Positions 24,409 to 43,434 of a stretch of DNA of 64,000 bases are shown piece after piece (position 1 is the first letter of the stretch; each line of letters begins with the position of its first letter). Made by a program: the position numbers and the translations under genes. Source of the stretch: Macrostomum lignano (lineage: Eukaryota); contig NIVC01000012.1 of NCBI GenBank assembly GCA_002269645.1, positions 1,054,001 to 1,118,000 of the forward strand, in the 5' to 3' direction. The notes beneath the pieces are model-generated. The model worked only from the letters and a program-made list of their open reading frames with translations, searched no databases and was not told the DNA's origin.

Positions 24409-24717
24409 GTCAAAACTAAGTTGCATGGTAGTGTAATGTCAGGTTGCACATGTACACCAAAATGACCAGTATGATAAATTGGACTAAGTGACATACAAAA
24501 ATGATTAGGATGTGTTGTCTATAGTTTTAACCATTAGAGCAGTTGTTCTCCATTCGTAATATGATTTGTACCTGCCTGTCTTACCTAATAATCTCACTAG
24601 AAATATCTGATGTAAATTTTAATTTCAAGTTTGATATGTATATGAATTCAAACTAGAAAACACCATTGTGTATTCTAATCCAACTAAATTCATAATCAAT
24701 CTTATTCATGCCAGATA

Positions 24718-27700
24718 ATGGTCGATATTGGGCGTCGCTCCCGTTCCCAACCAGTCGATGACGTCACAGAATCGGAACTGCACAGACTGTTGGGTTGCAT
24801 GCTTGAGAAAGCTTACACCAGCCGTCTGCTTACTGACTTGCCAAACTCATCGCCATTGTCTGGTTCGGGAGGCTCCGAAGCTGCCGCTGCACTTCTAGCC
24901 AGCAGCAATTGTCGGGAACTGATTGAGTTGGACTACAAACTGCACGGCTGTTTAGACAATACCGATGGCCAGTTGTGTGACACTTATCCGCCATATTTGT
25001 TTTTGCCTAGCAGCTGTTTGAGGCGCCGGCCTGAGCAGGAGTTAGCATATCCGGATGACTTCTATGCCGTGTGCAAATCTGCTAGTAAGGCCCGGGTTCG
25101 AGGCCGCTTCCCGGCGCCTGCGCTCATGTTTGAGGGCAAACTGGTGTGCCGGTCTTCAGCCCTGAGTGCTTGGCCTGAAGCTTATTCTAGGTAGGATTGT
25201 GCAGTGTTGAGGAGGGAATCAGAGAGAGCAGAATGAGGGAATCAGAGAGAGCAGAGTGGGGAATCAGAGAGAGCAGAATGAGGGAATCAGAGAGAGCAGA
25301 GTGGGGAATCAGAGAGAGCAGAGTGGGGAATCACAGAGAGCAGAGTGGGGAATCACAGGGAGCAGAGTGGGGAATCACAGGGAGCAGAGTGGGGAAATCA
25401 CAGAGAGGGCAGAGTGGAGGAATCAGAGAGATGGCAGAGTGGGGGAATCAGAGAGGGCAGAGTGGGGAATCACAGGGGGCAGAGTGGGGAATCACAGGGA
25501 GCAGAGTGGGGAATCACAGGGAGCAGAGTGGGGAATCAGAGAGGGCAGAGTGGGGAATCAGAGAGAGCAGAGTGGGGAATCACAGAGAGCAGAGTGGGGA
25601 ATCACAGGAAGCAGAGTGGGGAATCACAGGAAGCAGAGTGGGGAATCACGGAGAGCAGAGTGGGGAATCACGGAGAGCAGAGTGGGGAATCACGGAGAGC
25701 AGAGTGGGGAATCACGGAGAGCAGGGTGGGGAATCACGGAGAGCAGAGTGGGGAGTCAGAGAGGGCAGAGTGGGGAATCAGAGAGAGCAGAGTGGGGAAT
25801 CACAGAGAGCAGAGTGGGGAATCACAGAGAGCAGAGTGGGGAATCACAGAGAGCAGAGTGGGGAATCACGGAGAGCAGGGTGGGGAGAATCACGGAGAGC
25901 AGAGTGGGGAATCACGGAGAGCAGGGTGGGGAATCACGGAGAGCAGAGTGGGGAGAATCACGGAGAGCAGGGTGGGGAATCACGGAGAGCATTCCCAAAC
26001 CATCCTCTGCCAACAGAAGCGCCATCGGGGTGGTGTCGTCCTGGTTTTCTTCTATGAGCGTCGGTAGAAAATCCACGCCCAATTCTATGGCGCCGACCTC
26101 CGGCGAGTCAGAGGCGGCTGACAGCGAATCGGTTGCCTCAGCAACCGGTATTAGCAGCAATAGCTTCTTTGACCGGACCAGGGGCAAGGACATGGCCCTA
26201 TTAGACTGCTTGCGTGTCAGACAAATTGTCGACTTAACAGTGGAGGCTAAGTTCTACAAGTACAGAGTGCCCTTGCCATTATCGTCGACGGAGAAGATTG
26301 ATAAGAGAGGACGATACAAGTAATTCTTTGTGGTTTCTATTTTAAATGTGTTGTGTGCTGTTACAGACAGTTGGTATTAGTGACTTTAATGTCATTGACA
26401 GGCGAAATAGCTTTATTGGGAAATCCCCACCTACCCCAGACTGTACAGTAGGAAAATCCGCCCACCCACCCCAGAGTGTACAGTAGGGAAATCCACCCAC
26501 CTACACCAGACTGTACAGTAGGGAAATCCCCCACCTACCCCTGACTACAGGACGAAAATCCGCCCACCCACCCCAGAGTGTACAGTAGGGAAATCCACCC
26601 ACCTACACCAGACTGTACAGTAGGGAAATCCCCCACCTACCCCAGACTACAGTAGGAAAATCCGCCCACCCACCCCAGAGTGTACAGTAGGGAAATCCCC
26701 CACCTACACCAGACTGTACAGTAGGGAAATCCCCCACCTACCCAGACTACAGTAGGAAAATCCGCCCACCCACCCCAGAGTGTACAGTAGGGAAATCCCC
26801 CCACCTACACCAGACTGTACAGTAGGGAAATCACCCACCTACCCCAGACTACAGTAGGAAAATCCGCCCACCCACCCCAGAGTGTACAGTAGGGAAATCC
26901 CCCCACCTACACCAGACTGTACAGTAAGGAAATCCCCCACCTACCCCAGACTGTTCAGTAGGAAAAAAATCCCCACACCCACCCCAGACTGTACCGTAGG
27001 GAAATCCCCACACCCACCCTAGACTAGGGAAATCCCCACACCCACCCTAGACTAGGGAAATCCCCACACCCACCCTAGACTAGGGAAATCCCCATCCAGC
27101 TTAGAATGTACAGTAGGGAAATCCCCGCACCCACCCCAGACTGTACATAAAGAAAATTCCCATGCACTCCCCCCTAACTTAATTGCTCTCACTGAACTCC
27201 CTCATTACAGAGACTACAAGCTATGCGTGATTCCTTATCCCGGCTGCGAATTCTTCCGCGTCTGGTCCATCGGTCACGGCCTATCGATGTCCGGCGTGCA
27301 TTTCGCTTGGCACAACCCGTCAGTCACCGCCCAGTTAAGATTCGATGACCAGCTGCCATTGTGCGCTGTAGACATCGACTGGCAACGCTATCGAGACTGG
27401 GACCTGACCAGGCTGACCGCTAACTACATGCGCCTGCTGTTAGGCTATCTGGTTGAGTTCCCAGACGATGGCGGCATTATGCTGCACTGCGTCAGCGGCT
27501 GGGACAGGACGCCAATGTTTATCAGCCTGCTGAGGTGCCTGCTCTGGTCTGAAGGCCTGTGCCATGCCAGTCTGAGCGCAATGCAGTTGCTCTATTTGAC
27601 CCTGGCTTATGATTGGTTCCTCTTTGGTAAGTTGTCGGCCATAGACATTCTAGTGTTTCATAGCCTAGTGGTCTAGCGCGGCGCTCTGATGTACCAGCGG

Positions 27701-29137
27701 TCCGGGCTCGATTCCAAGTGCAGTCACATTGTCGCTAGTCAGTGCTTTTAGATAATGTTTTGTCTATGGTAAAAACTGTCGCAACTTTGATTTCACTTTA
27801 TAGCCTGTGGTTCTAGCGTCACTTCTGGATAATGTCCTTGAGTTCTGGATAATGTCCACGACTTGTTTTATCATTGTCTATGACAAAACCATATACACAA
27901 ACACATTGTCTCATGAATGTATTTTTAGAAGCCTAAAATAATGATTCCTAAGCGTGGAATAATGAGCGTACAGCATGACACAATGAAGCTAGACAAAGGT
28001 CGGAACTCAGGATAATGGGTGGGGGCACTCGTGCGTTGAATTCAGCAACACCATAGACACGCTACGCGCACTCGTGATCTAGGCGTTGCTGAATTTAGCA
28101 CACTCGTGCCCCCACCCATTATCCTGAGTTCCGACAAGGGTCCGGAGGGCTGACAACTTAATTCTTGTTTGAGAAGTTGCGCAACAAAAAATGACTTTGT
28201 ACTCCTACTGTTAATTTAGAGCGAAAGTGGAATCTCGGCTTGGCTCTGCTCGTGCAATTAACGCCCAGTTAGAGGGCCAACCCCCAAGGCACAGTGAAGT
28301 GTACATTCCTAACGATAAAATAAAGTTAGGGCCGCTGTACACTCCTGTGTGAGTGTGTGCCTGCGCGTATGGCTGCACTCAACACATTGTGCCAATTTGC
28401 CACACTTTTCCGGTTATTTTAACACACTTTTGAGCGGCCAATTCTTTCACACTTTCAAATTTGATTTGATTGGACGAGAGATGGGGTGGGTGAACTGGTT
28501 GGTCACTTTGGCAGAGAGTATGATGTACATTGATTACTGGTGGCGAGGGCCAGAGGAATGGACAATCAGATAAGAAAAATAGACGAGTCTATAACTTAGT
28601 CATAAACTTTTAATTAGTTTAATAAAATCTCATAGCAGTATGCCTGCTCTTATCAGTTATAGAAATCTGCTGGTGTAGCCGCTAAATGGTGTGTAATAAT
28701 GGCCTTTTTGACTGGATAAAAGTTTCTTTACAAAGTCGCCTAAAGTGCGTCAGGGTGCACGCAGCCCCCTAGACTAAAACTGGCTGCCTATATACAGGCC
28801 CTATAATATTATTGAATAACATCGACGCCCAACACTCGCAGGCCACCGCCTGCCAGACCGGATGCAGAAGGATGAGTGCGTGCTGCACTACTGCTTCCAC
28901 TTTCTGCACTCCGTTAGCCGGGACCGGCATCTGTCCATGCTGCGCTGGTATCCGCATCTGCAGAAGCCCCAGCAGCAGCAGCAGCCTCAGCAGCTGACTG
29001 ATCGAACTGTCCGTCTCAGGCAGCTGTGCGACATCTTTTTCAGCGCCTATTCGAATGCTGAGAAGCGTCGAGCTGCCGCATTAGCCGCGGCCAACTCGGC
29101 CAGTGCTGATCAGTTCAATGGCAGTCAGCTGAGGTAG
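24718..29137 (+). CDS. MTMR14: Myotubularin-related protein 14-like phosphoinositide phosphatase; join(24718..25190,26017..26319,27211..27626,28842..29137), 495 aa
   Basis: Motifs ARVRGRFPAP, SSTEKIDK, IPYPGCEFF, catalytic HCVSGWDRTP (CX5R), AYDWFLFGHRL; all three introns GT-AG with compatible phases (2,2,1). Confidence 0.92.
25207..25990. repeat. 22-bp minisatellite (GAGCAGAGTGGGGAATCACAGA)n in MTMR14 intron 1
   Basis: Direct reading. Confidence 0.93.
26420..27150. repeat. ~34-bp minisatellite (CTGTACAGTAGGGAAATCCCCCACCTACACCAGA-like) in MTMR14 intron 2
   Basis: Direct reading; variants recur as a higher-order unit. Confidence 0.9.
27661..28375 (+). mobile_element. tRNA-derived SINE split by a ~480-bp insertion (head 27661-27730, body ~28212-28375)
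   Basis: Head TAGCCTAGTGG...GGCTCGATTCCAAGTGCAGTCACATT; the 11-kb copy joins CACATT directly to AATTT..GGAATCTCGG. Confidence 0.7.
27999..28135. mobile_element. 137-bp hairpin MITE nested in the split SINE
   Basis: 30-bp perfect inverted repeat GTCGGAACTCAGGATAATGGGTGGGGGCAC plus inner TGAATTCAGCAAC arm; AAG on both flanks. Confidence 0.72.
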
Positions 29138-29219
29138 TCTTCCCTCCCTGAGTCTCCAAGGCTGAACTCTTAATAAACTTTTAAATATTTTATTTGCTCC
29201 TTTCAGTTAAAACAATTGT

Positions 29220-29640
29220 GTTTAGCATCGGTTTATTTGTGTTTACAATCTGTCTATTTGTGTTTGAAATCAGTCTGTGTGTGTTTAAAATCAGTCTGTG
29301 TGTGTTTAAAATTGGTCTGTGTGTGTTTAAAATTGGTCTGTCTGTGTTTAAAATTGGTTTGTTTGTGGTTGAAATCGGTCTGTGTGTGTTTAAAACATCG
29401 AAGTGTCTGTTTTTAACATCGCTTTGTGTTTACTATCTGTCTGAGTATGTTTAATATCTGTCCAGTTGTGTTTAGTACCTGTTAGAATGTGTTTAGTGTC
29501 TGTCTAAGTGTGTTTAACATTGATCTATGTATGTTTAACATCTTTCAAGTTGTGTTTAATGTCTGTCTATGTGTGTTTAACATCTGTCTAAGTGTATTTA
29601 AAATCGTTCTGGGCGTGTTTACTATCTGTGTAAACGTGTT
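29220..29640. repeat. Degenerate ~20-bp tandem repeat (TGTGTTTAAAATCGGTCTG-like)
   Basis: Recurring GTGTTTAA core. Confidence 0.75.
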
Positions 29641-30017
29641 TAGTTCATTCAGTTTCTAGAAAGATTTACGTTTAAATCGATTTCAGGCGTTTTAGTACAA
29701 GTAATAATCGAGTAATCGAGTGTAAAAAACAAAACGATTCAACGAATGAATGTTTCTTCAAATATTCTAGTATTTGTCCTGCAAGCTCTGCTTTGCTGTT
29801 TCATGCAAATTGTTAGTTTACCCTACTAATTTAGTGCATGACTTTTTATTTGAGTGTTATCGAAGATTTTCTATGCAGATTTTATATTTTACTACTTAAA
29901 GTATATGTAATTTGTGTTAAAACTACTTTCTAATACACAATAGATTTATTGCATCTAGTTGTTCTAAAAAATTTTCTAACCTTATTGTAAATCAATAATA
30001 GTTATCACCTTTTGGGT

Positions 30018-30571
30018 ATCGCCTGTTAGACAGGGGTGTCACCTGTTAGAGAGGGGTGTCACCTGTTAGACAGGGGTGTCGCCTGTTAGAGAGGGGTGTC
30101 ACCTGTTAGACAGGGGTGTCACCTGTTAGACAGGGGTGTCACCTGTTAGACAGGGGTGTCACCTGTTAGACAGGGGTGTCGCCTGTTAGATAGGGGTGTC
30201 ACCTGTTAGAGAGGGGTGTCACCTGTTAGACAGGGGTGTCACCTGTTAGAGAGGGGTGTCGCCTGTTAGACAGGGGTGTCACCTGTTAGAGAGGGGTGTC
30301 ACCTGTTAGAGAGGGGTGTCACCTGTTAGACAGGGGTGTCACCTGTTAGACAGGGGTGTCGCCTGTTAGATAGGGGTGTCACCTGTTAGAGAGGAGTGTC
30401 ACCTGTTAGAGAGGGGTGTCACCTGTTAGACAGGGGTGTCGCCTGTTAGACAGGGGTGTCGCCTGTTAGACAGGGGTGTCGCCTGTTAGACAGGGGTGTC
30501 ACCTGTTAGAGAGGGGTGTCACCTGTTAGACAGGGGTGTCGCCTGTTAGACAGGGGTGTCACCTGTTACAG
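30018..30571. repeat. 20-bp minisatellite (CACCTGTTAGACAGGGGTGT)n
   Basis: About 27 units. Confidence 0.95.
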
Positions 30572-30976
30572 GTATGTATGACTATAAATCAACTGTAACC
30601 TTTGTAAGATGTTATCTGTAATCCTGGCAAGCCTTTTCTAATGGTTTTATATTCAGTAGTCTGTGATCATTTAGTCAATTGCGTAAAAACTTACAATGTA
30701 TGCTGTTTTAATTGTTTGCCGGTAAGCAAAAAAGTTTATAGTTTTTTTCATTAATACCGATACCGATACCAATGCCGATTTTATATCTTTCTTTGTGTCG
30801 TCTTTCTCTATCAGGTGGATTTTGTCTGTCTTATTCCTGTGTACCACCAGTAATTCTAATTGTCATTGTAAAAATGCGAGAAAATGGTTATCATTTTTTA
30901 TTTCTAGAGTTCAGGAAATTAGTACCTTTATTTTATAAGAATTTATCAATTTTTATCAAATCTAGAAGTAATTTCT

Positions 30977-31236
30977 ATGCCAGTCCTCAAAATGAAAGCG
31001 CCATTTCCATGCCAGTCCTCAGAATGAAAGCGCCATTTCCATGCCAGTCCTCAGAATGAAAGCGCCATTTCCATGCCAGTCCTCAAAATGAAAGCGCCAT
31101 TTCCATGCCAGTCCTCAGAATGAAAGCGCCATTTCCATGCCAGTCCTCAGAATGAAAGCGCCAGTTTTTATGCCAGTCCTCAGAATGAAAGCGCCATTTC
31201 CATGCCAGTCCTCAGAATGAAAGCGCCATTTCCATG
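30977..31236. repeat. 32-bp minisatellite (CAGTCCTCAGAATGAAAGCGCCATTTCCATGC)n just upstream of frataxin
   Basis: About 8 units. Confidence 0.92.
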
Positions 31237-32664
31237 TCGGTCCTCGCTTCATATATATTTCTAAACTTGAGGTCCAAATTAAATTTTTTTCAGCATCGCC
31301 TCCAGCTTCCCATCCGTCATCTGCTCTCTCGCAGAGCTCTGACCACCTGCAGCCAATTAGCAGCTGTCAATCAGATTGGAAGCAAATCTATTCCCTATGC
31401 TTGTTGCGTTCAAGCGCTAAACCCACCTATTCGGTATTCGATTGGTGTAGTACCGAGTTCGATTCGATTGTTGGCCAGCTCAACTGAGTCCGGTGGTTCC
31501 GCTAAATCGTAAGTTAATCTTGCTGCTAGCAGCAGAACAGCCTGCCCTCAGACCCGCAGCAGAACAGCCTGCCCTCAGACCCACTGCAGAACAGCCTGCC
31601 CTCAGACCCACTGCAGAACAGCCTGCCCTCAGACCCACTGCAGAACAACCTGCCATCCCTGCCCTCAGCCCCACTGCAGAACAGCCTGCCCTCAGACCCA
31701 CTGCAGAACAGCCTGCCCTCAGCCCCACTGCAGAACAGCCTGCCCTCAGACCCACTGCAGAACAACCTGCCCTTAGCCTCAGACCCACTGCAGAACAACC
31801 TGCCATCCCTGCCCTCAGCCCCACTGCAGAACAGCCTGCCCTCAGACCCACTGCAGAACAACCTGCCATCCCTCCATCCCTACCCTCAGACCCACTGCAG
31901 AACAACCTGCCATCCCTGCCCTCAAACCCGCAGCAGAACAACCTGTCCTCAGCCCTCAGACCCGCAGCAGAACAACCTGCCCTTAGCCTCAGACCCGCAG
32001 CAGAACAACCTGCCCTTAGCCCTCAGACCCGCAGCAGAACAACCTGCCCTCAGCTCTCAGACCCGCAGCAGAAAAAACTGTCCTCAGCCCTCAGACCCGC
32101 AGCAGAACAACCTGTCCTCAGCCCTCAGACCCGCAGCAGAACAACCTGTCCTTAGCCCTCAGACCCGCAGCTGAACAACCTGCCCCCTGCCCTGCCCTCA
32201 GACCCGCAGCAGAACAGCCTGCCCTCAGACCCACTGCAGAACAACCTGCCATCTTTTCCCTCAGACCCGCAGCCGAGCTGTCCCTCGGAGATTTCGAACA
32301 CGTCACAGACGAAGTGCTGGAACGAATCGCCGATAAAGTTGACGATCTTCTATCAAAATCAGCTGACTCAAGCGACTATGACGTCACGCTGGCAAGCGGC
32401 GTGCTCACTCTGAGTCTCGGTGAGCACGGAACCTACGTGATCAACAAGCAGACGCCGAACCGGCAAATATGGCTGTCTTCGCCAACCTCAGGACCGAAAC
32501 GATTTGATTACAGTGCGGACAGTGGCGAGTGGACTTACTCTCACGATGGTTCCAAACTGCACCAGTTACTGACTAAGGAACTGAGCGAAGTGTTTCAACA
32601 GCTCAACTCTGACACTAATATTGATTTTACTGACTGTGCAGTCTATAAATTGGATGGTTCGTAA
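31234..32664 (+). CDS. FXN: Frataxin with mitochondrial presequence; join(31234 or 31294..31508,32265..32664)
   Basis: DVTLASGVLTL, GTYVINKQTPNRQIWLSSPTSGPKRFDY; phase-2 donor TC|GTAAG at 31509 matches acceptor CTTTTCCCTCAG|A at 32264; exon 1 is Arg/Leu/Ser-rich with almost no acidic residues; start codon uncertain. Confidence 0.9.
31530..32270. repeat. 27-bp minisatellite (CAGAACAGCCTGCCCTCAGACCCACTG)n filling the frataxin intron
   Basis: Direct reading; runs into the acceptor. Confidence 0.92.
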
Positions 32665-35600
32665 AGAATATGACTCAATTTATTTACTGCAACAATGCCG
32701 CTATATCGCATACTTCTCGTAGTTTTTTCTAAAAGTAACACCATTATTAATTATAAGAAACTGATTACCACAATTATTAGAGAAAAATAGAAAAAATATG
32801 CATTTCTTGACCTACACGTATACTACTTACGATGCACTACTAATAAGTAGTTAAATAAATGACATCGTCCCACAAGCAGCGCTGACTCCTAAGCACATCA
32901 TACACAAGTCAGATCTGGACTCTAGACAGGATGAGTCACCGATAATTGGACAACCGGAATTATCAGCCTCTGGCTCACGACAACAAAGTTGGTGGGTTGT
33001 ACATGTCACATGCCAGTCTTCCAGCGGCACTATATATAGATCAATAATCAGCAATAAGCAATATTAAAAAGATCAGCAATAATAAAAAGAAGAAATAAAT
33101 TATAACAATTTCTGATGCTAACATTGTCTATGAGCTGAAGTAAAAATTTTGAGTTACATTTCGAGCTTCTGGCGATCCAGCTATATTATTATTCATTCCT
33201 GACTGGATTGCTACGACAACTACGAAAGATCAACACTGATACTTTGGTTGATATTAGCGAAATAGAGACTGGTTTATCCACCAGATTGGTCTGGGGAGAT
33301 TCATTTGATTTGATCGCCTTTGTCATTTGGATATACCAGTTTCAGTTTCAGTGTCATTTTGAACCTGCTTTTTTCCATTATTCTGTCGTTGGGTTCAAAA
33401 AAGCATGACAATCGGCAGTTCCTCTTTTTGGCCTTGAGTAGTCAATCTTTTAACAGCGTGGGTGTTTGAAGGTAAGCGCGAAGGTGGCATCGTTGGACAT
33501 GAATCATCCCGTACCGTTCTGTCTGTCTGGTAAGGGCAATCAATCTATTTCGGCACTGCGGCTGTCCATATTAGGCGTTGCGTTCTTTCTCTGACTATTT
33601 TAAAGTTCTCGTCGACATAAAATTCTAACGCTGCCCCATAATTTATCTGCTGACCGGCGGGCGACTCAGTTGCGATACCATCTCGTTTTTTAATCCACTA
33701 TGGTCTCGCAATTCCTGATTATGTGTTGCTACACTTTCTTGCAGGGGTATGCATTGATGACACTGCTATTGGCAAGAAAAATGATCAACTCTCCAGTCAA
33801 ATTTCTCAGTCACAAATTATCTACATGTATTTGTCTATGGCCCAAGCCTGTCTTTGTTCCATATAGGCTATCAACTTTAACTTGAGAAATTCAGAAAGCA
33901 GAACTGACCATGGACTAACAGCCTTTACTGCTGGTAATTTTTGGAGTCTATGGTAAAAGAAAAGTTATGTGCTGCATATAAAGTAGCCGTTCCTGCTGAG
34001 CTTGGTCAGTAGCGCTGATCATTTACGAAAAATGGGCGAAATAAGTCCATTATCTGCAATGAAATGCAGCGATTCGGTTTCAGCATTCTCTGATATGACA
34101 TCATCAGTCTCAGAATCCGATGTATGCAAAATGTTCATGGTTGTAGCTGATTTACTTTTCAATAAAATGATGCACTACTCGAATTAAGTGCTTATTAAGT
34201 AGGTGCAGTGCTTTATCTTTCAAAAAGGCCGGCTTGCAGATTTTAAACGGAACCGTAGTGTCTATAGCTAGATATCGAGTGTACACACTGCATAATCTAT
34301 TTAGAGAGCATAAGTAAAATGCGCTTTGAAACTGCTTTTTTCGACCCTAGATTTGTCCAAGCCGAGTCCAAAATGTTCCATTCTCGGCTAGAAAGTCTAG
34401 AAAGGCCATTCTCAGCTACAGGGGGGGGGCAAAGCTTATTAGCTATAGTCTTATGGTCAGCCCAGCTGACCATATCGGCAGGAACGGAGCTTTTGTATTG
34501 TAGTTCCGGCGCGAAAAGGTTAAATATCCAATTGCATGTGCAATGCCATATGTACATGTATATATTTGAATATCAATTGATCCAGACGTGCAAAAGGGCC
34601 ATAGACAGGCATACATAGACAGTTCAATATAGTCAAAATTAGAGTTAAGAGAGTTTTTATTATTAACTGGAGCTGACCTTCTATGGCTTTTGACGATCTA
34701 AATGTGAATTTGAACAATTAAAACGGGAGGCCATAGACATTCAAGCCGCAGATCACATCCCAGTCATGGACTTAAGCAGTTTAGCCAAGGAGTTCTAAAT
34801 CTAGCAGCTGGAATGACAACTGAAATATCAGCTATACAAGATGAGGCCAAGATTAGAGATCGCAAGCGTGCGACGTAAACTGCAGAGTATTTAAAAAGAA
34901 AGATCGTATTCGTATATCATTTCAACTCGTTTGGCTAGGTAAATCTCGTCGATCAATAACACCACTGTCGTCTCATAGGCATGTAGTCTGTTGTAGCACA
35001 ATTTGAGATAGTCAGAGAGTTGTCCGGACCTGTAGACCCCATCCTCCTTGTTAATTTTCGAAGGATGGCAGTATTAGCGATTTGGTCTCCAGAAGCCGCT
35101 GATAAGCAGCCGGACTCAGAAAACAGAATATAAAGAGAAAACGATCAGTAATAAAATCTGATTCCGTGAAGTGAAGAGAGCAAATTCGAGTGTGCTTCGA
35201 TGGCTTGAAAGTTGCTTCTCAGGAAATGCTCTTTAATCATTTTTCCAGCAGGTCGTCTCGATTCGGAAACTTGTGGAATGAAATCCTCGCTGACCGTGCC
35301 GTTGCCGACTCGCTGCCGGACTTGCAGCCAAAAACGGCGCATTTATTTGGCATGCAGAGGACGCAGAGACTTGGCTTCAGGAAAGTCACTCTGGCAAATT
35401 AGTGCTTACAGGCTAAGACAAAATAAAATTCTTCTTTCTGGCAATCTAAGTTGATGCGGCAAGCAAAATCCTATGTCTGTGGCAATCGCAGTAAGCCTTA
35501 TCTTGTATAAAGAAGTCCTCACCGCTATTTCAGTTGTCATTCCAGTAGGCCGGATTTAGAATTCCTTGGTTTAGCAAAGTCCACTGAGGGAGGCTTGGCC

Positions 35601-35767
35601 ATAGACTATAACTTTGGACATTCAATGGGAAAAAGCAAGGAATTCTAAATCTAACAACTAGATTTGCTAGATTTAGAATTCCTTGGAAAAAGCCATTCAA
35701 AACGGGAATCGGACTGAAATTTTATTTCCCTGTCTGCTCATCTTTGGCCTGAAAGCGACCCAATTCA

Positions 35768-35941
35768 ATGATGGCACCACCAATTCCTGTGGCAGATCGC
35801 CAGCGGCTGATTGATGCGATTCAACAAGGGTCATCCATAGCAGGAGCTGCAAGAATTCTGCAAATCAAGAAAACAACCGCATTCCAAATTGTTGCCAACT
35901 TTCGACTCGATGGCAGAGTGGAATCGCTTCGTCGTTACTGA
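35768..35941 (+). pseudogene. Truncated Tc1/IS630-like transposase N-terminal HTH fragment
   Basis: Hand translation MMAPPIPVADRQRLIDAIQQGSSIAGAARILQIKKTTAFQIVANFRLDGRVESLRRY*; no DDE domain follows. Confidence 0.6.
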
Positions 35942-36088
35942 GTTCTGAGTTACTTTTGTATTGCTTCCGGGCCCTTTGTTCTCTTTTAAATATTCCAGTG
36001 GCCCTGAGATATAATTTAAAGTACATTAAATTAAGCGAATTCCCGTTTTGAATAGCTTTTTCCCATTCAGCGCGCCTGCCATGGTGTG

Positions 36089-42958: not shown

Positions 42959-43434
42959 AGTCCGTGGTTAGCATGAAATCTCTCAATTCAATCTAACACA
43001 TAGTCATAATTCATAATCTGACTCTAAAGAACTTTCCAGACAAATGTTGCTTTGCAATTAGCCGATACGTCAACATTTTTGGCGCCGAACTTGATGTATT
43101 AGGCTAATCCGGCAGCTTAGATAAACGTCGACTGTTGATACGACAAATGATGAATAAATCTATTGCATGAATAGTATAAACCAGACATATACCGGTGGCT
43201 TATATGGTTCTGAAAAATCTCCTTTTTGCTTTTAGCCATCCATCCAATCAACTCTGTATGTCCTCAGAGGTAGGGGTTTAAAATCAGTCAGATAGGTCTG
43301 TCTGTAGGTCTATCTGTAGATATGAAAGTAGTAAACGGATTGTAGACAGATTTTTGCTATCTCTGAGATAAATGATGTGTGTAAATGTCTCCATGAGTCA
43401 ATGTGTTCGTCACGAAATGCTATACTTGAGTTTC

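What the first reader, a model, noticed from the sequence alone, without database searches (positions are those of the whole stretch)
31234..31330. Frataxin may get its start codon from a spliced leader
Seen: a strong acceptor TTTTTTTCAG at 31293 is followed in phase 0 by HRLQLPIRHLLSRRALTTCS with no Met; the only upstream in-frame ATG (31234) sits in the last decayed unit of a 32-bp minisatellite. Established: flatworm spliced leaders end in AUG, which can serve as initiator Met. Inference: SL addition gives MHRLQLPIRHLLSRR..., a convincing mitochondrial presequence.
Basis: partly seen in the sequence, partly recalled or inferred. Interest (0 to 1): 0.7.

Follow-up and report, generated by a model that had tools for sequence, protein, structure and literature searches.

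The report
Frataxin start codon supplied by spliced leader
In this flatworm (Macrostomum lignano) the frataxin gene has no start codon of its own and almost certainly borrows the AUG at the end of the trans-spliced leader RNA, a mechanism already known in flatworms, so this is a well-supported but ordinary new example.

Summary
The window is Macrostomum lignano DNA (Mlig_3_7, NIVC01000012.1). A two-exon frataxin gene (31294-31508, 32265-32664) starts right after TTTTTTTCAG and has no Met codon in any of its 204 codons. The only upstream in-frame ATG (31234) lies in the last decayed unit of a 32-bp minisatellite.

The M. lignano spliced leader ends in ...TTGCATG. Joined at 31294, its AUG is in frame and gives MHRLQLPIRHLLSRR..., with no acidic residue in the first 64 positions.

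No RNA read was seen, so the support is indirect:
- The transcript-based GenBank CDS is 5'-partial and begins exactly at 31294.
- Two paralogous loci in the same assembly read TTGCATG|CATCGC where the window reads TTTTCAG|CATCGC. This is a same-length 4-nt block identical to the leader's tail.
- The assembly was polished with RNA-seq reads, and a protein from the older ML2 assembly reads NFFQ (TTTCAG) at that spot. I therefore read the block as leader-bearing reads written into the reference.

The mechanism has been known since Cheng et al. 2006, so this is a new member of a known kind. The probable reference artefact is a useful by-product.

The parts
30971..31245 (+). 32-bp minisatellite (unit ATTTCCATGCCAGTCCTCAGAATGAAAGCGCC, 8.6 copies) in the presumed outron. 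Each unit carries two ATGs and a TGA.
   Evidence: TRF. Also present upstream of both paralog copies.
31186..31188 (+). First in-frame stop (TGA) upstream of the frataxin reading frame
31234..31236 (+). The only upstream in-frame ATG, in the last decayed minisatellite unit. It is the rival start codon.
   Evidence: This stretch diverges from paralog L002 at 20% plus a 6-nt indel, against 10% and no indel in exon 1.
31284..31293 (+). Polypyrimidine tract plus CAG: the proposed SL trans-splice acceptor
   Evidence: Matches the [T/C]TNCAG motif of M. lignano trans-splice sites. Replaced by TTTTTGCATG in paralog loci L001 and L002.
31294..31508 (+). Frataxin exon 1 (71 codons + 2 nt). It encodes the presequence HRLQLPIRHLLSRR...: no Met, no D/E in the first 64 residues, 7 R/K.
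   Evidence: The GenBank CDS starts at 31294.
31509..32264 (+). Intron with donor GTAAGT (31509-31514) and acceptor TTTTCCCTCAG (32254-32264). It is filled by a 27/34-bp minisatellite whose units each contain CCCTCAG.
32265..32664 (+). Frataxin exon 2: the complete frataxin domain and the stop TAA (32662-32664)
   Evidence: Pfam PF01491, E=5.7e-36, residues 80-183. Aligns to human mature frataxin over residues 76-183.
24712..29137 (+). Upstream same-strand gene (497-aa product, faint myotubularin-related Pfam hit, CX5R phosphatase motif HCVSGWDRT). It is the possible first gene of an operon; AATAAA lies at 29172-29177.
   Evidence: The distance to 31294 is about 2.1 kb, of which 1,256 nt are tandem repeats.

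Best explanation
The frataxin pre-mRNA of this locus is trans-spliced at 31293|31294 to the 35-nt M. lignano spliced leader (...CAATTTATTGCATG). The leader supplies the cap, a 32-nt 5' UTR and, with its last three bases, the initiator AUG. Translation then gives M-HRLQLPIRHLLSRRALTT..., a 205-residue precursor. Exon 1 is the mitochondrial presequence and exon 2 is the mature frataxin domain. The sequence from the minisatellite to the acceptor is outron and is discarded. The gene is probably the downstream member of an operon with the phosphatase-like gene that ends at 29137.

Shown here: gene structure, acceptor, frame, absence of any other AUG, sequence of the SL, and the annotation boundary.

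Inferred: the actual SL junction in RNA, initiation at the SL AUG, mitochondrial import, and operon status.
For: 1. The SL ends in ATG (PMC8629364; PMC5173321). All flatworm SLs do, and the AUG is a documented initiator: in S. mansoni it is in frame in 28% of trans-spliced mRNAs, and more than 40 cDNAs need it.
2. The acceptor TTTTTTTCAG sits directly before the ORF and fits the species' trans-acceptor motif.
3. There are no Met codons in the 204-codon CDS, so the SL AUG is the only in-frame AUG of an mRNA that starts at 31294.
4. The GenBank CDS comes from a pipeline that cuts transcripts at mapped SL reads. It is 5'-partial and starts at exactly 31294. A transcript reaching further upstream would have yielded extra codons or the ATG at 31234.
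5. Paralog loci L001 and L002 read TTTTTGCATG|CATCGC where the window reads TTTTTTTCAG|CATCGC. This is a same-length 4-nt block that recreates the SL's last 7 nt. Against L001, the flanking 270 nt hold only 2 substitutions. In about 20 kb compared across three copies, it was the only difference that puts CATG opposite an NCAG acceptor.
6. Mlig_3_7 was polished with Pilon using RNA-seq reads. UniProt A0A1I8G7K2 is, from my own knowledge and not checked here, a model from the older ML2 assembly. It is identical to the L002 protein elsewhere but reads NFFQ|HRFQ (= TTT CAG) where L002 encodes NFCM|HRFQ.
7. The N-terminus looks like a presequence: no acidic residue in the first 64 positions and 7 R/K. 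The frataxin domain starts at about residue 76.
Against: - No RNA read, EST or RACE product carrying the SL at 31294 was seen. The collections available held no transcript-derived version of the protein.
- The polishing-artefact reading of the paralog loci is an inference. Raw DNA reads were not inspected.
- The annotated CDSs of the two paralogs start 6 and 27 nt downstream of the junction rather than at it, which I cannot explain.
- The upstream ATG at 31234 is in frame without stops. It remains in frame in the diverged paralog despite a 6-nt indel, so a minor unspliced isoform is not excluded.
- The SL AUG context (UUGC-AUG-C) is weak by vertebrate Kozak rules.
- No targeting predictor could be run.
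Confidence: 0.8

Rival explanations
1. A conventional, non-trans-spliced mRNA starts in or upstream of the minisatellite and is translated from the genomic ATG at 31234. This gives MSVLASYIFLNLRSKLNFFQ-HRLQ..., a 20-residue longer presequence.
For: - The ATG is in frame with no stop before exon 1.
- The extension has no acidic residues.
- In paralog L002 the homologous ATG is also in frame, with a 6-nt (frame-preserving) deletion and no stops.
Against: - The transcript-based CDS starts at 31294, not at 31234. A strong acceptor lies between the two.
- Any 5' UTR running through the minisatellite would carry two upstream ATGs per 32-bp unit, each opening a short ORF.
- The 60-nt stretch diverges twice as fast as exon 1 and has an indel.
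- Keeping the frame and lacking stops over 18-20 AT-rich codons is expected by chance roughly 1 time in 7 to 8 (my own rough estimate).
- The SL tail found at the junction in the paralog assemblies implies abundant trans-spliced reads.
Confidence: 0.08
2. An upstream cis-spliced exon supplies the ATG, as in the ab initio models A0A1I8G240 and A0A1I8FV59 that begin MQKDECVLHYCF...
For: Two UniProt models from the older assembly join an upstream ORF to the frataxin domain.
Against: - Their first 91 residues map to 28862-29134, which is the last coding exon of the upstream gene in its own frame.
- They skip exon 1 and read through intron minisatellite, so they are chimeric read-through predictions.
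- They would lack a presequence.
- The GenBank model has no upstream exon, and a 5'-partial ORF that begins at the first base of the exon implies the transcript ends there.
Confidence: 0.03
3. The GCATG in the paralog loci is real genomic sequence. On this view the functional frataxin copies have their own ATG, and the window's copy has lost it: either it is a decaying duplicate, or it is rescued secondarily by the SL.
For: - Both paralog loci, one of them about 10% diverged, show ATG|CAT, so simple parsimony would make ATG ancestral.
- M. lignano carries redundant copies after recent duplication.
Against: - It requires a 4-nt contiguous change that turns an exact 7-nt SL tail into a perfect acceptor, within otherwise near-identical sequence.
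- The protein attributed to the older assembly has NFFQ at that spot in the L002-type copy.
- The assembly was polished with RNA-seq.
- The paralogs' own annotated CDSs are 5'-partial and do not include that ATG.
- The window copy has an intact ORF, splice sites and its own transcript model.
Confidence: 0.05

Closest known systems
Schistosoma mansoni mRNAs that use the spliced leader's 3'-terminal AUG as initiator (Cheng, Cohen, Ndegwa & Davis 2006, J Biol Chem 281:733; cited)
   Same: A flatworm SL ending in AUG is joined directly to an ORF that lacks its own start codon, and the SL AUG is in frame and required.
   Different: Different species (a free-living macrostomorph) and a different SL sequence. 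Here translation from the SL AUG is inferred, not shown in a translation assay. I found no paper reporting SL-AUG-dependent genes in M. lignano.
slORFs: open reading frames created by SL addition (slORFfinder, PMC9851317)
   Same: The start codon is donated by the leader, so the ORF is invisible to genome-only annotation and gets flagged 'partial'.
   Different: The slORFs in that paper were called from ribosome footprints in nematodes, Oikopleura and trypanosomes, often with near-cognate codons. Here there is a canonical AUG and no footprint data.
Downstream genes of SL-resolved operons in M. lignano (Ustyantsev & Berezikov 2021, PMC8629364)
   Same: A same-strand upstream gene, an SL acceptor at the 5' end, and a repeat-adjusted intergenic distance below their 1-kb threshold (about 840 nt after removing 1,256 nt of tandem repeats).
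   Different: The raw distance is about 2.1 kb. A polycistronic precursor was not observed here, and an own promoter in the intergenic region is not excluded.
Eukaryotic frataxin (PF01491; human FXN, yeast Yfh1)
   Same: A complete frataxin domain (E=5.7e-36) preceded by a basic presequence of about 70 residues with no acidic residues, similar in length to the human one.
   Different: The precursor has no genome-encoded initiator, and there are no Met codons in the whole gene.

Membership tests
Flatworm SL-AUG-initiated mRNA (Cheng et al. 2006) | The species' spliced leader ends in AUG | tested here: met
   M. lignano SL = CGGTCTCTTACTGCGAAGACTCAATTTATTGCATG (PMC8629364; PMC5173321)
Flatworm SL-AUG-initiated mRNA (Cheng et al. 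2006) | A 3' splice acceptor sits immediately upstream of the ORF | tested here: met
   TTTTTTTCAG at 31284-31293 fits [T/C]TNCAG
Flatworm SL-AUG-initiated mRNA (Cheng et al. 2006) | The SL is actually joined at that site in mature mRNA | tested here: inconclusive
   Indirect only. The transcript-based 5'-partial CDS starts at 31294. The SL tail TTGCATG replaces the acceptor in two paralog loci of an RNA-seq-polished assembly. No read was seen.
Flatworm SL-AUG-initiated mRNA (Cheng et al. 2006) | The SL AUG is in frame with the ORF, with no intervening stop | tested here: met
   AUG|CAU CGC CUC...: the junction is at a codon boundary
Flatworm SL-AUG-initiated mRNA (Cheng et al. 2006) | No other in-frame AUG is available in the mature mRNA | tested here: met
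   0 Met in 204 codons. The same holds for both paralog proteins.
Flatworm SL-AUG-initiated mRNA (Cheng et al. 2006) | Translation initiates at the SL AUG | not testable with these tools
   Needs ribosome profiling, a reporter or in vitro translation
Frataxin / CyaY (PF01491) | Frataxin domain above the Pfam gathering score | tested here: met
   123.4 bits against a cut-off of 21.3, residues 80-183. Human frataxin structures match at E about 1e-30.
Frataxin / CyaY (PF01491) | N-terminal mitochondrial targeting presequence (eukaryotic members) | tested here: inconclusive
   Composition fits: no D/E in the first 64 residues, 7 R/K, rich in S, L and A. No TargetP or MitoFates was available.
M. 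lignano operon, downstream gene (PMC8629364 criterion) | Same-strand neighbour, downstream gene SL trans-spliced, repeat-adjusted intergenic distance under 1 kb | tested here: inconclusive
   Same strand. About 2.1 kb raw, about 0.84 kb after subtracting the TRF arrays. The upstream 3' end was inferred from AATAAA only, and no polycistronic RNA was seen.

The most novel reading that the evidence does not exclude
The TTGCATG at the junction in the two paralogous loci is genuine DNA, not a polishing artefact. In that case a few bases of the spliced leader, including its AUG, have been copied from trans-spliced mRNA back into the genome by a short cDNA-templated conversion. This would turn an SL-dependent gene into one with its own start codon, and would show that SL-donated and genome-encoded initiators can interconvert between recent paralogs.
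Probability: 0.04. Interest if true: 0.8.

Novelty: new member of a known kind. Interest (0 to 1): 0.3.

Why it matters
For biology: an essential, conserved mitochondrial protein in a transgenic flatworm model depends on trans-splicing for its start codon as well as its cap. The gene is therefore invisible as a complete ORF to genome-only annotation, and GenBank flags it 'partial'. Expression constructs or knock-ins that omit the SL acceptor would not be translated.

For the M. lignano community: the comparison suggests that the reference assembly Mlig_3_7 contains spliced-leader bases written over real acceptor sites at some trans-spliced genes, because RNA-seq reads were used for polishing. 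That would create false genomic ATGs, erase AG acceptors and distort motif statistics at trans-splice sites.

Neither point overturns current understanding.

Tried and rejected
- Transcript-derived copies of the protein, which would show M or SL-encoded residues at the N-terminus. The homology search and cluster listing returned only three GenBank 'partial' proteins and UniProt models. An exact look-up of the ML2 protein found no contig.
- The gene identifiers Mlig008744 and Mlig023473 in full texts and held supplements: nothing found.
- Wasik et al. 2015 (PMC4603488) is not held, so the statement that ML2 was not RNA-polished rests on my memory.
- The upstream gene's locus tag, to test operon membership. 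Two homology searches found nothing, and enumerating splice combinations for its 497-aa product gave more than 200 solutions, so I dropped this.
- More examples of the SL-tail artefact.
  - TTGCATG occurs 22 times in the window against 13.4 expected, a weak excess.
  - There is no full SL in the window.
  - A scan of three paralog copies for CATG opposite NCAG found only the frataxin junction.
  - The SL-like site at 29826-29840 is shared by all copies, with a variant, so it is natural.
- The ab initio models P0002 and P0003 are rejected as chimeras, and P0004 also looks chimeric.
- A TATA-like TATATAT at 31251, about 40 nt before the junction, was considered as a promoter. I set it aside: a transcript starting there would have an outron of about 10 nt and still no AUG.

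Full report
**What the window is.** The spliced frataxin model is 100% identical over its full length to GenBank PAA94317.1, 'hypothetical protein BOX15_Mlig008744g2, partial [Macrostomum lignano]'. The exact-protein look-up places it on NIVC01000012.1 of assembly GCA_002269645.1 (Mlig_3_7), with the CDS at window 31294-32664. The window therefore corresponds to about 1,054,001-1,118,000 of that contig.

**The observation.**
- TTTTTTTCAG lies at 31284-31293.
- The frame from 31294 reads HRLQLPIRHLLSRRALTTCS... and is open for 71 codons, up to a GTAAGT donor at 31509.
- Upstream in the same frame there is one ATG (31234) and then a TGA (31186).
- The ATG lies in the last, decayed unit of a 32-bp minisatellite (30971-31245, 8.6 copies).
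- The exact 10-mer TTTTTTTCAG occurs 3 times in 64 kb against 0.44 expected. It fits [T/C]TNCAG, the top motif at M. lignano trans-splice acceptors.

**Gene structure.**
- Exon 1 is 31294-31508.
- The 756-nt intron is almost entirely a 27/34-bp minisatellite.
- Exon 2 is 32265-32664 and ends in TAA.
- The joint is ...SGGSAKS|PAAELSLGDFEH...
- Exon 2 holds the whole frataxin domain: PF01491, 123 bits, residues 80-183. Human mature frataxin aligns to residues 76-183.
- Exon 1 looks like a presequence: no Asp or Glu in the first 64 residues, 7 Arg/Lys, rich in Ser, Leu and Ala.
- There is no Met codon anywhere in the 204 codons, and none in the two paralog proteins either. An mRNA that begins at 31294 therefore has no in-frame AUG of its own.

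**The leader.** The M. lignano spliced leader is CGGTCTCTTACTGCGAAGACTCAATTTATTGCATG (PMC8629364). A longer consensus ending in the same ...CAATTTATTGCATG is given in PMC5173321. About 30-39% of genes are trans-spliced to it. All flatworm SLs end in AUG, and the AUG is a documented initiator: in S. mansoni it is in frame in 28% of trans-spliced mRNAs, and more than 40 cDNAs need it (Cheng et al. 2006, as cited in PMC12582326 and PMC9851317). Joined at 31294, the AUG abuts CAU CGC CUC, in frame, and gives MHRLQLPIRHLLSRR...

**Evidence from the annotation.** The Mlig_3_7 gene models are transcript-based. SL-containing reads were trimmed and mapped, and the TBONE pipeline cut transcripts at those peaks. 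ORFs were then called with TransDecoder.
- A 5'-partial ORF is open to the 5' end of its transcript (from my knowledge of TransDecoder's ORF calling).
- A CDS starting at exactly 31294 therefore means the transcript starts within 2 nt of the acceptor.
- A transcript starting anywhere in 31187-31291 would have added codons.
- One reaching beyond 31186 would have been called complete from ATG 31234.
- One with an upstream cis exon would not begin at the exon's first base.

**Evidence from the paralogs.** The protein cluster has two more GenBank members, both 'partial', plus one UniProt entry. Their loci are L001/L004 (NIVC01004132.1) and L002/L005 (NIVC01001113.1); they share the same minisatellites, exon 1, intron repeat and exon 2. 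At the junction both read TTTTTGCATG|CATCGC where the window reads TTTTTTTCAG|CATCGC.
- The block has the same length as in the window. It is four consecutive substitutions (TTCA to GCAT) that recreate exactly the last seven bases of the SL.
- Against L001, the 55 nt upstream are identical and exon 1 has 2 differences in 215 nt.
- A scan of about 20 kb in three copies for CATG opposite an NCAG acceptor found this junction and nothing else.

Leader-bearing reads laid over the acceptor would overwrite exactly the bases nearest the junction.

An independent check comes from UniProt A0A1I8G7K2. From my own knowledge, this is a model from the older ML2 assembly of the same DV1 line. It is identical to the L002 protein over the 196 shared residues. 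It reads NFFQ|HRFQPP, which corresponds to AAT TTT TTT CAG, where L002 encodes NFCM|HRFQPP. I conclude that the GCATG in the two paralog loci is most likely an assembly artefact. If so, it also records abundant RNA-seq reads with the SL joined at precisely this junction. This remains an inference, because no raw DNA or RNA read was inspected.

**The rival start at 31234.**
- For it: the ATG is in frame without stops. In the roughly 10% diverged paralog the homologous ATG is still in frame after a 6-nt deletion.
- Against it, rate of change: this stretch differs at 10 of 49 positions plus the indel, whereas exon 1 differs at 22 of 215 with no indel.
- Against it, chance: keeping the frame and lacking stops over 18-20 AT-rich codons is expected fairly often by chance (my rough estimate, 1 in 7 to 8).
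- Against it, leader sequence: any 5' leader through the minisatellite would contain two upstream ATGs per unit.
- Against it, annotation: the model does not include this stretch.

I give it under 10% as the main route. A minor isoform cannot be excluded.

**Other models.** The UniProt models beginning MQKDECVLHYCF... take their first 91 residues from 28862-29134. That is the last coding exon of the upstream gene. They then skip exon 1 and read intron minisatellite into exon 2. They are chimeric read-through predictions.

**Context.**
- A same-strand gene lies upstream: a 497-aa product with a faint myotubularin-related Pfam hit and an HCVSGWDRT phosphatase motif. It ends at 29137, with AATAAA at 29172-29177.
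- The roughly 2.1 kb from there to 31294 contains three tandem arrays totalling 1,256 nt, which leaves about 0.84 kb.
- By the published repeat-adjusted 1-kb criterion, frataxin would count as a downstream operon gene. This is inference only.

**Unexplained.**
- The paralogs' annotated CDSs start 6 and 27 nt after the junction rather than at it.
- The upstream gene's 5'-partial CDS (from 24712) is preceded by TCAATCTTATTCATG. That is within two edits of the SL tail, and no AG acceptor is present.
  - Only 4 of 128,000 window positions are that close to the SL tail.
  - All three paralog copies are identical there, so I cannot tell artefact from natural sequence.
  - The SL tail is also one edit away from a typical pyrimidine-tract-plus-CAG acceptor, which inflates chance resemblance.

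**Verdict.** The mechanism is textbook for flatworms, and I found no report of it for a named M. lignano gene. The case is therefore a new member of a known kind, of modest interest. The likely leader-derived corruption of the reference at trans-splice sites is a practical by-product worth checking genome-wide.

Noticed in passing
L001 3988-3994 and L002 3970-3976 (= L004 9988-9994, L005 9970-9976); homologous to window 31287-31293: Two paralogous frataxin loci in Mlig_3_7 carry the spliced leader's last 7 nt (TTGCATG) in place of the acceptor TTTTCAG. This is probably an artefact of Pilon polishing with RNA-seq reads, and it may affect other trans-splice sites in this reference.
   Followed up: partly
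window 24696-24712: The upstream gene's 5'-partial CDS starts at 24712, right after TCAATCTTATTCATG(C). That 15-mer is within 2 edits of the SL tail, and no AG acceptor is present. The sequence is identical in all three paralog copies, so it could be the same artefact or natural sequence.
   Followed up: partly
window 31532-32273: The frataxin intron is almost wholly a 27/34-bp minisatellite. Each unit contains an acceptor-like CCCTCAG, and the array is open in some reading frames. Ab initio models (A0A1I8FV59) read through it into exon 2.
   Followed up: partly
window 29217-29642, 30014-30568, 30971-31245: Three different minisatellites (periods 21, 20 and 32 bp) fill the 2.1-kb interval between the two genes. 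All three are conserved in position in the paralog loci, with different copy numbers.
   Followed up: partly
window 25200-26060: A GC-rich tandem repeat inside the first intron of the upstream gene is open in all three forward frames for about 260-370 codons (GNQREQSGESERAEWGI...). This made splice enumeration ambiguous.
   Followed up: no
window 32763-36066: About 3.3 kb downstream of frataxin has no counterpart in the paralog loci, which have about 1.1 kb there. This looks like an insertion or a rearranged segment specific to this copy.
   Followed up: no
window 43155-43169 (+): TAAATCTATTGCATG matches 13 of the last 15 nt of the SL, including a 9-nt exact tail. No obvious ORF follows, and the paralog loci I fetched stop just short of it.
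   Followed up: no
window 31303-31305: A second in-frame acceptor-like CCTCCAG lies 12 nt inside exon 1. SL addition there would also be in frame (M-LPIRHLL...), so a tandem trans-splice site is possible.
   Followed up: no
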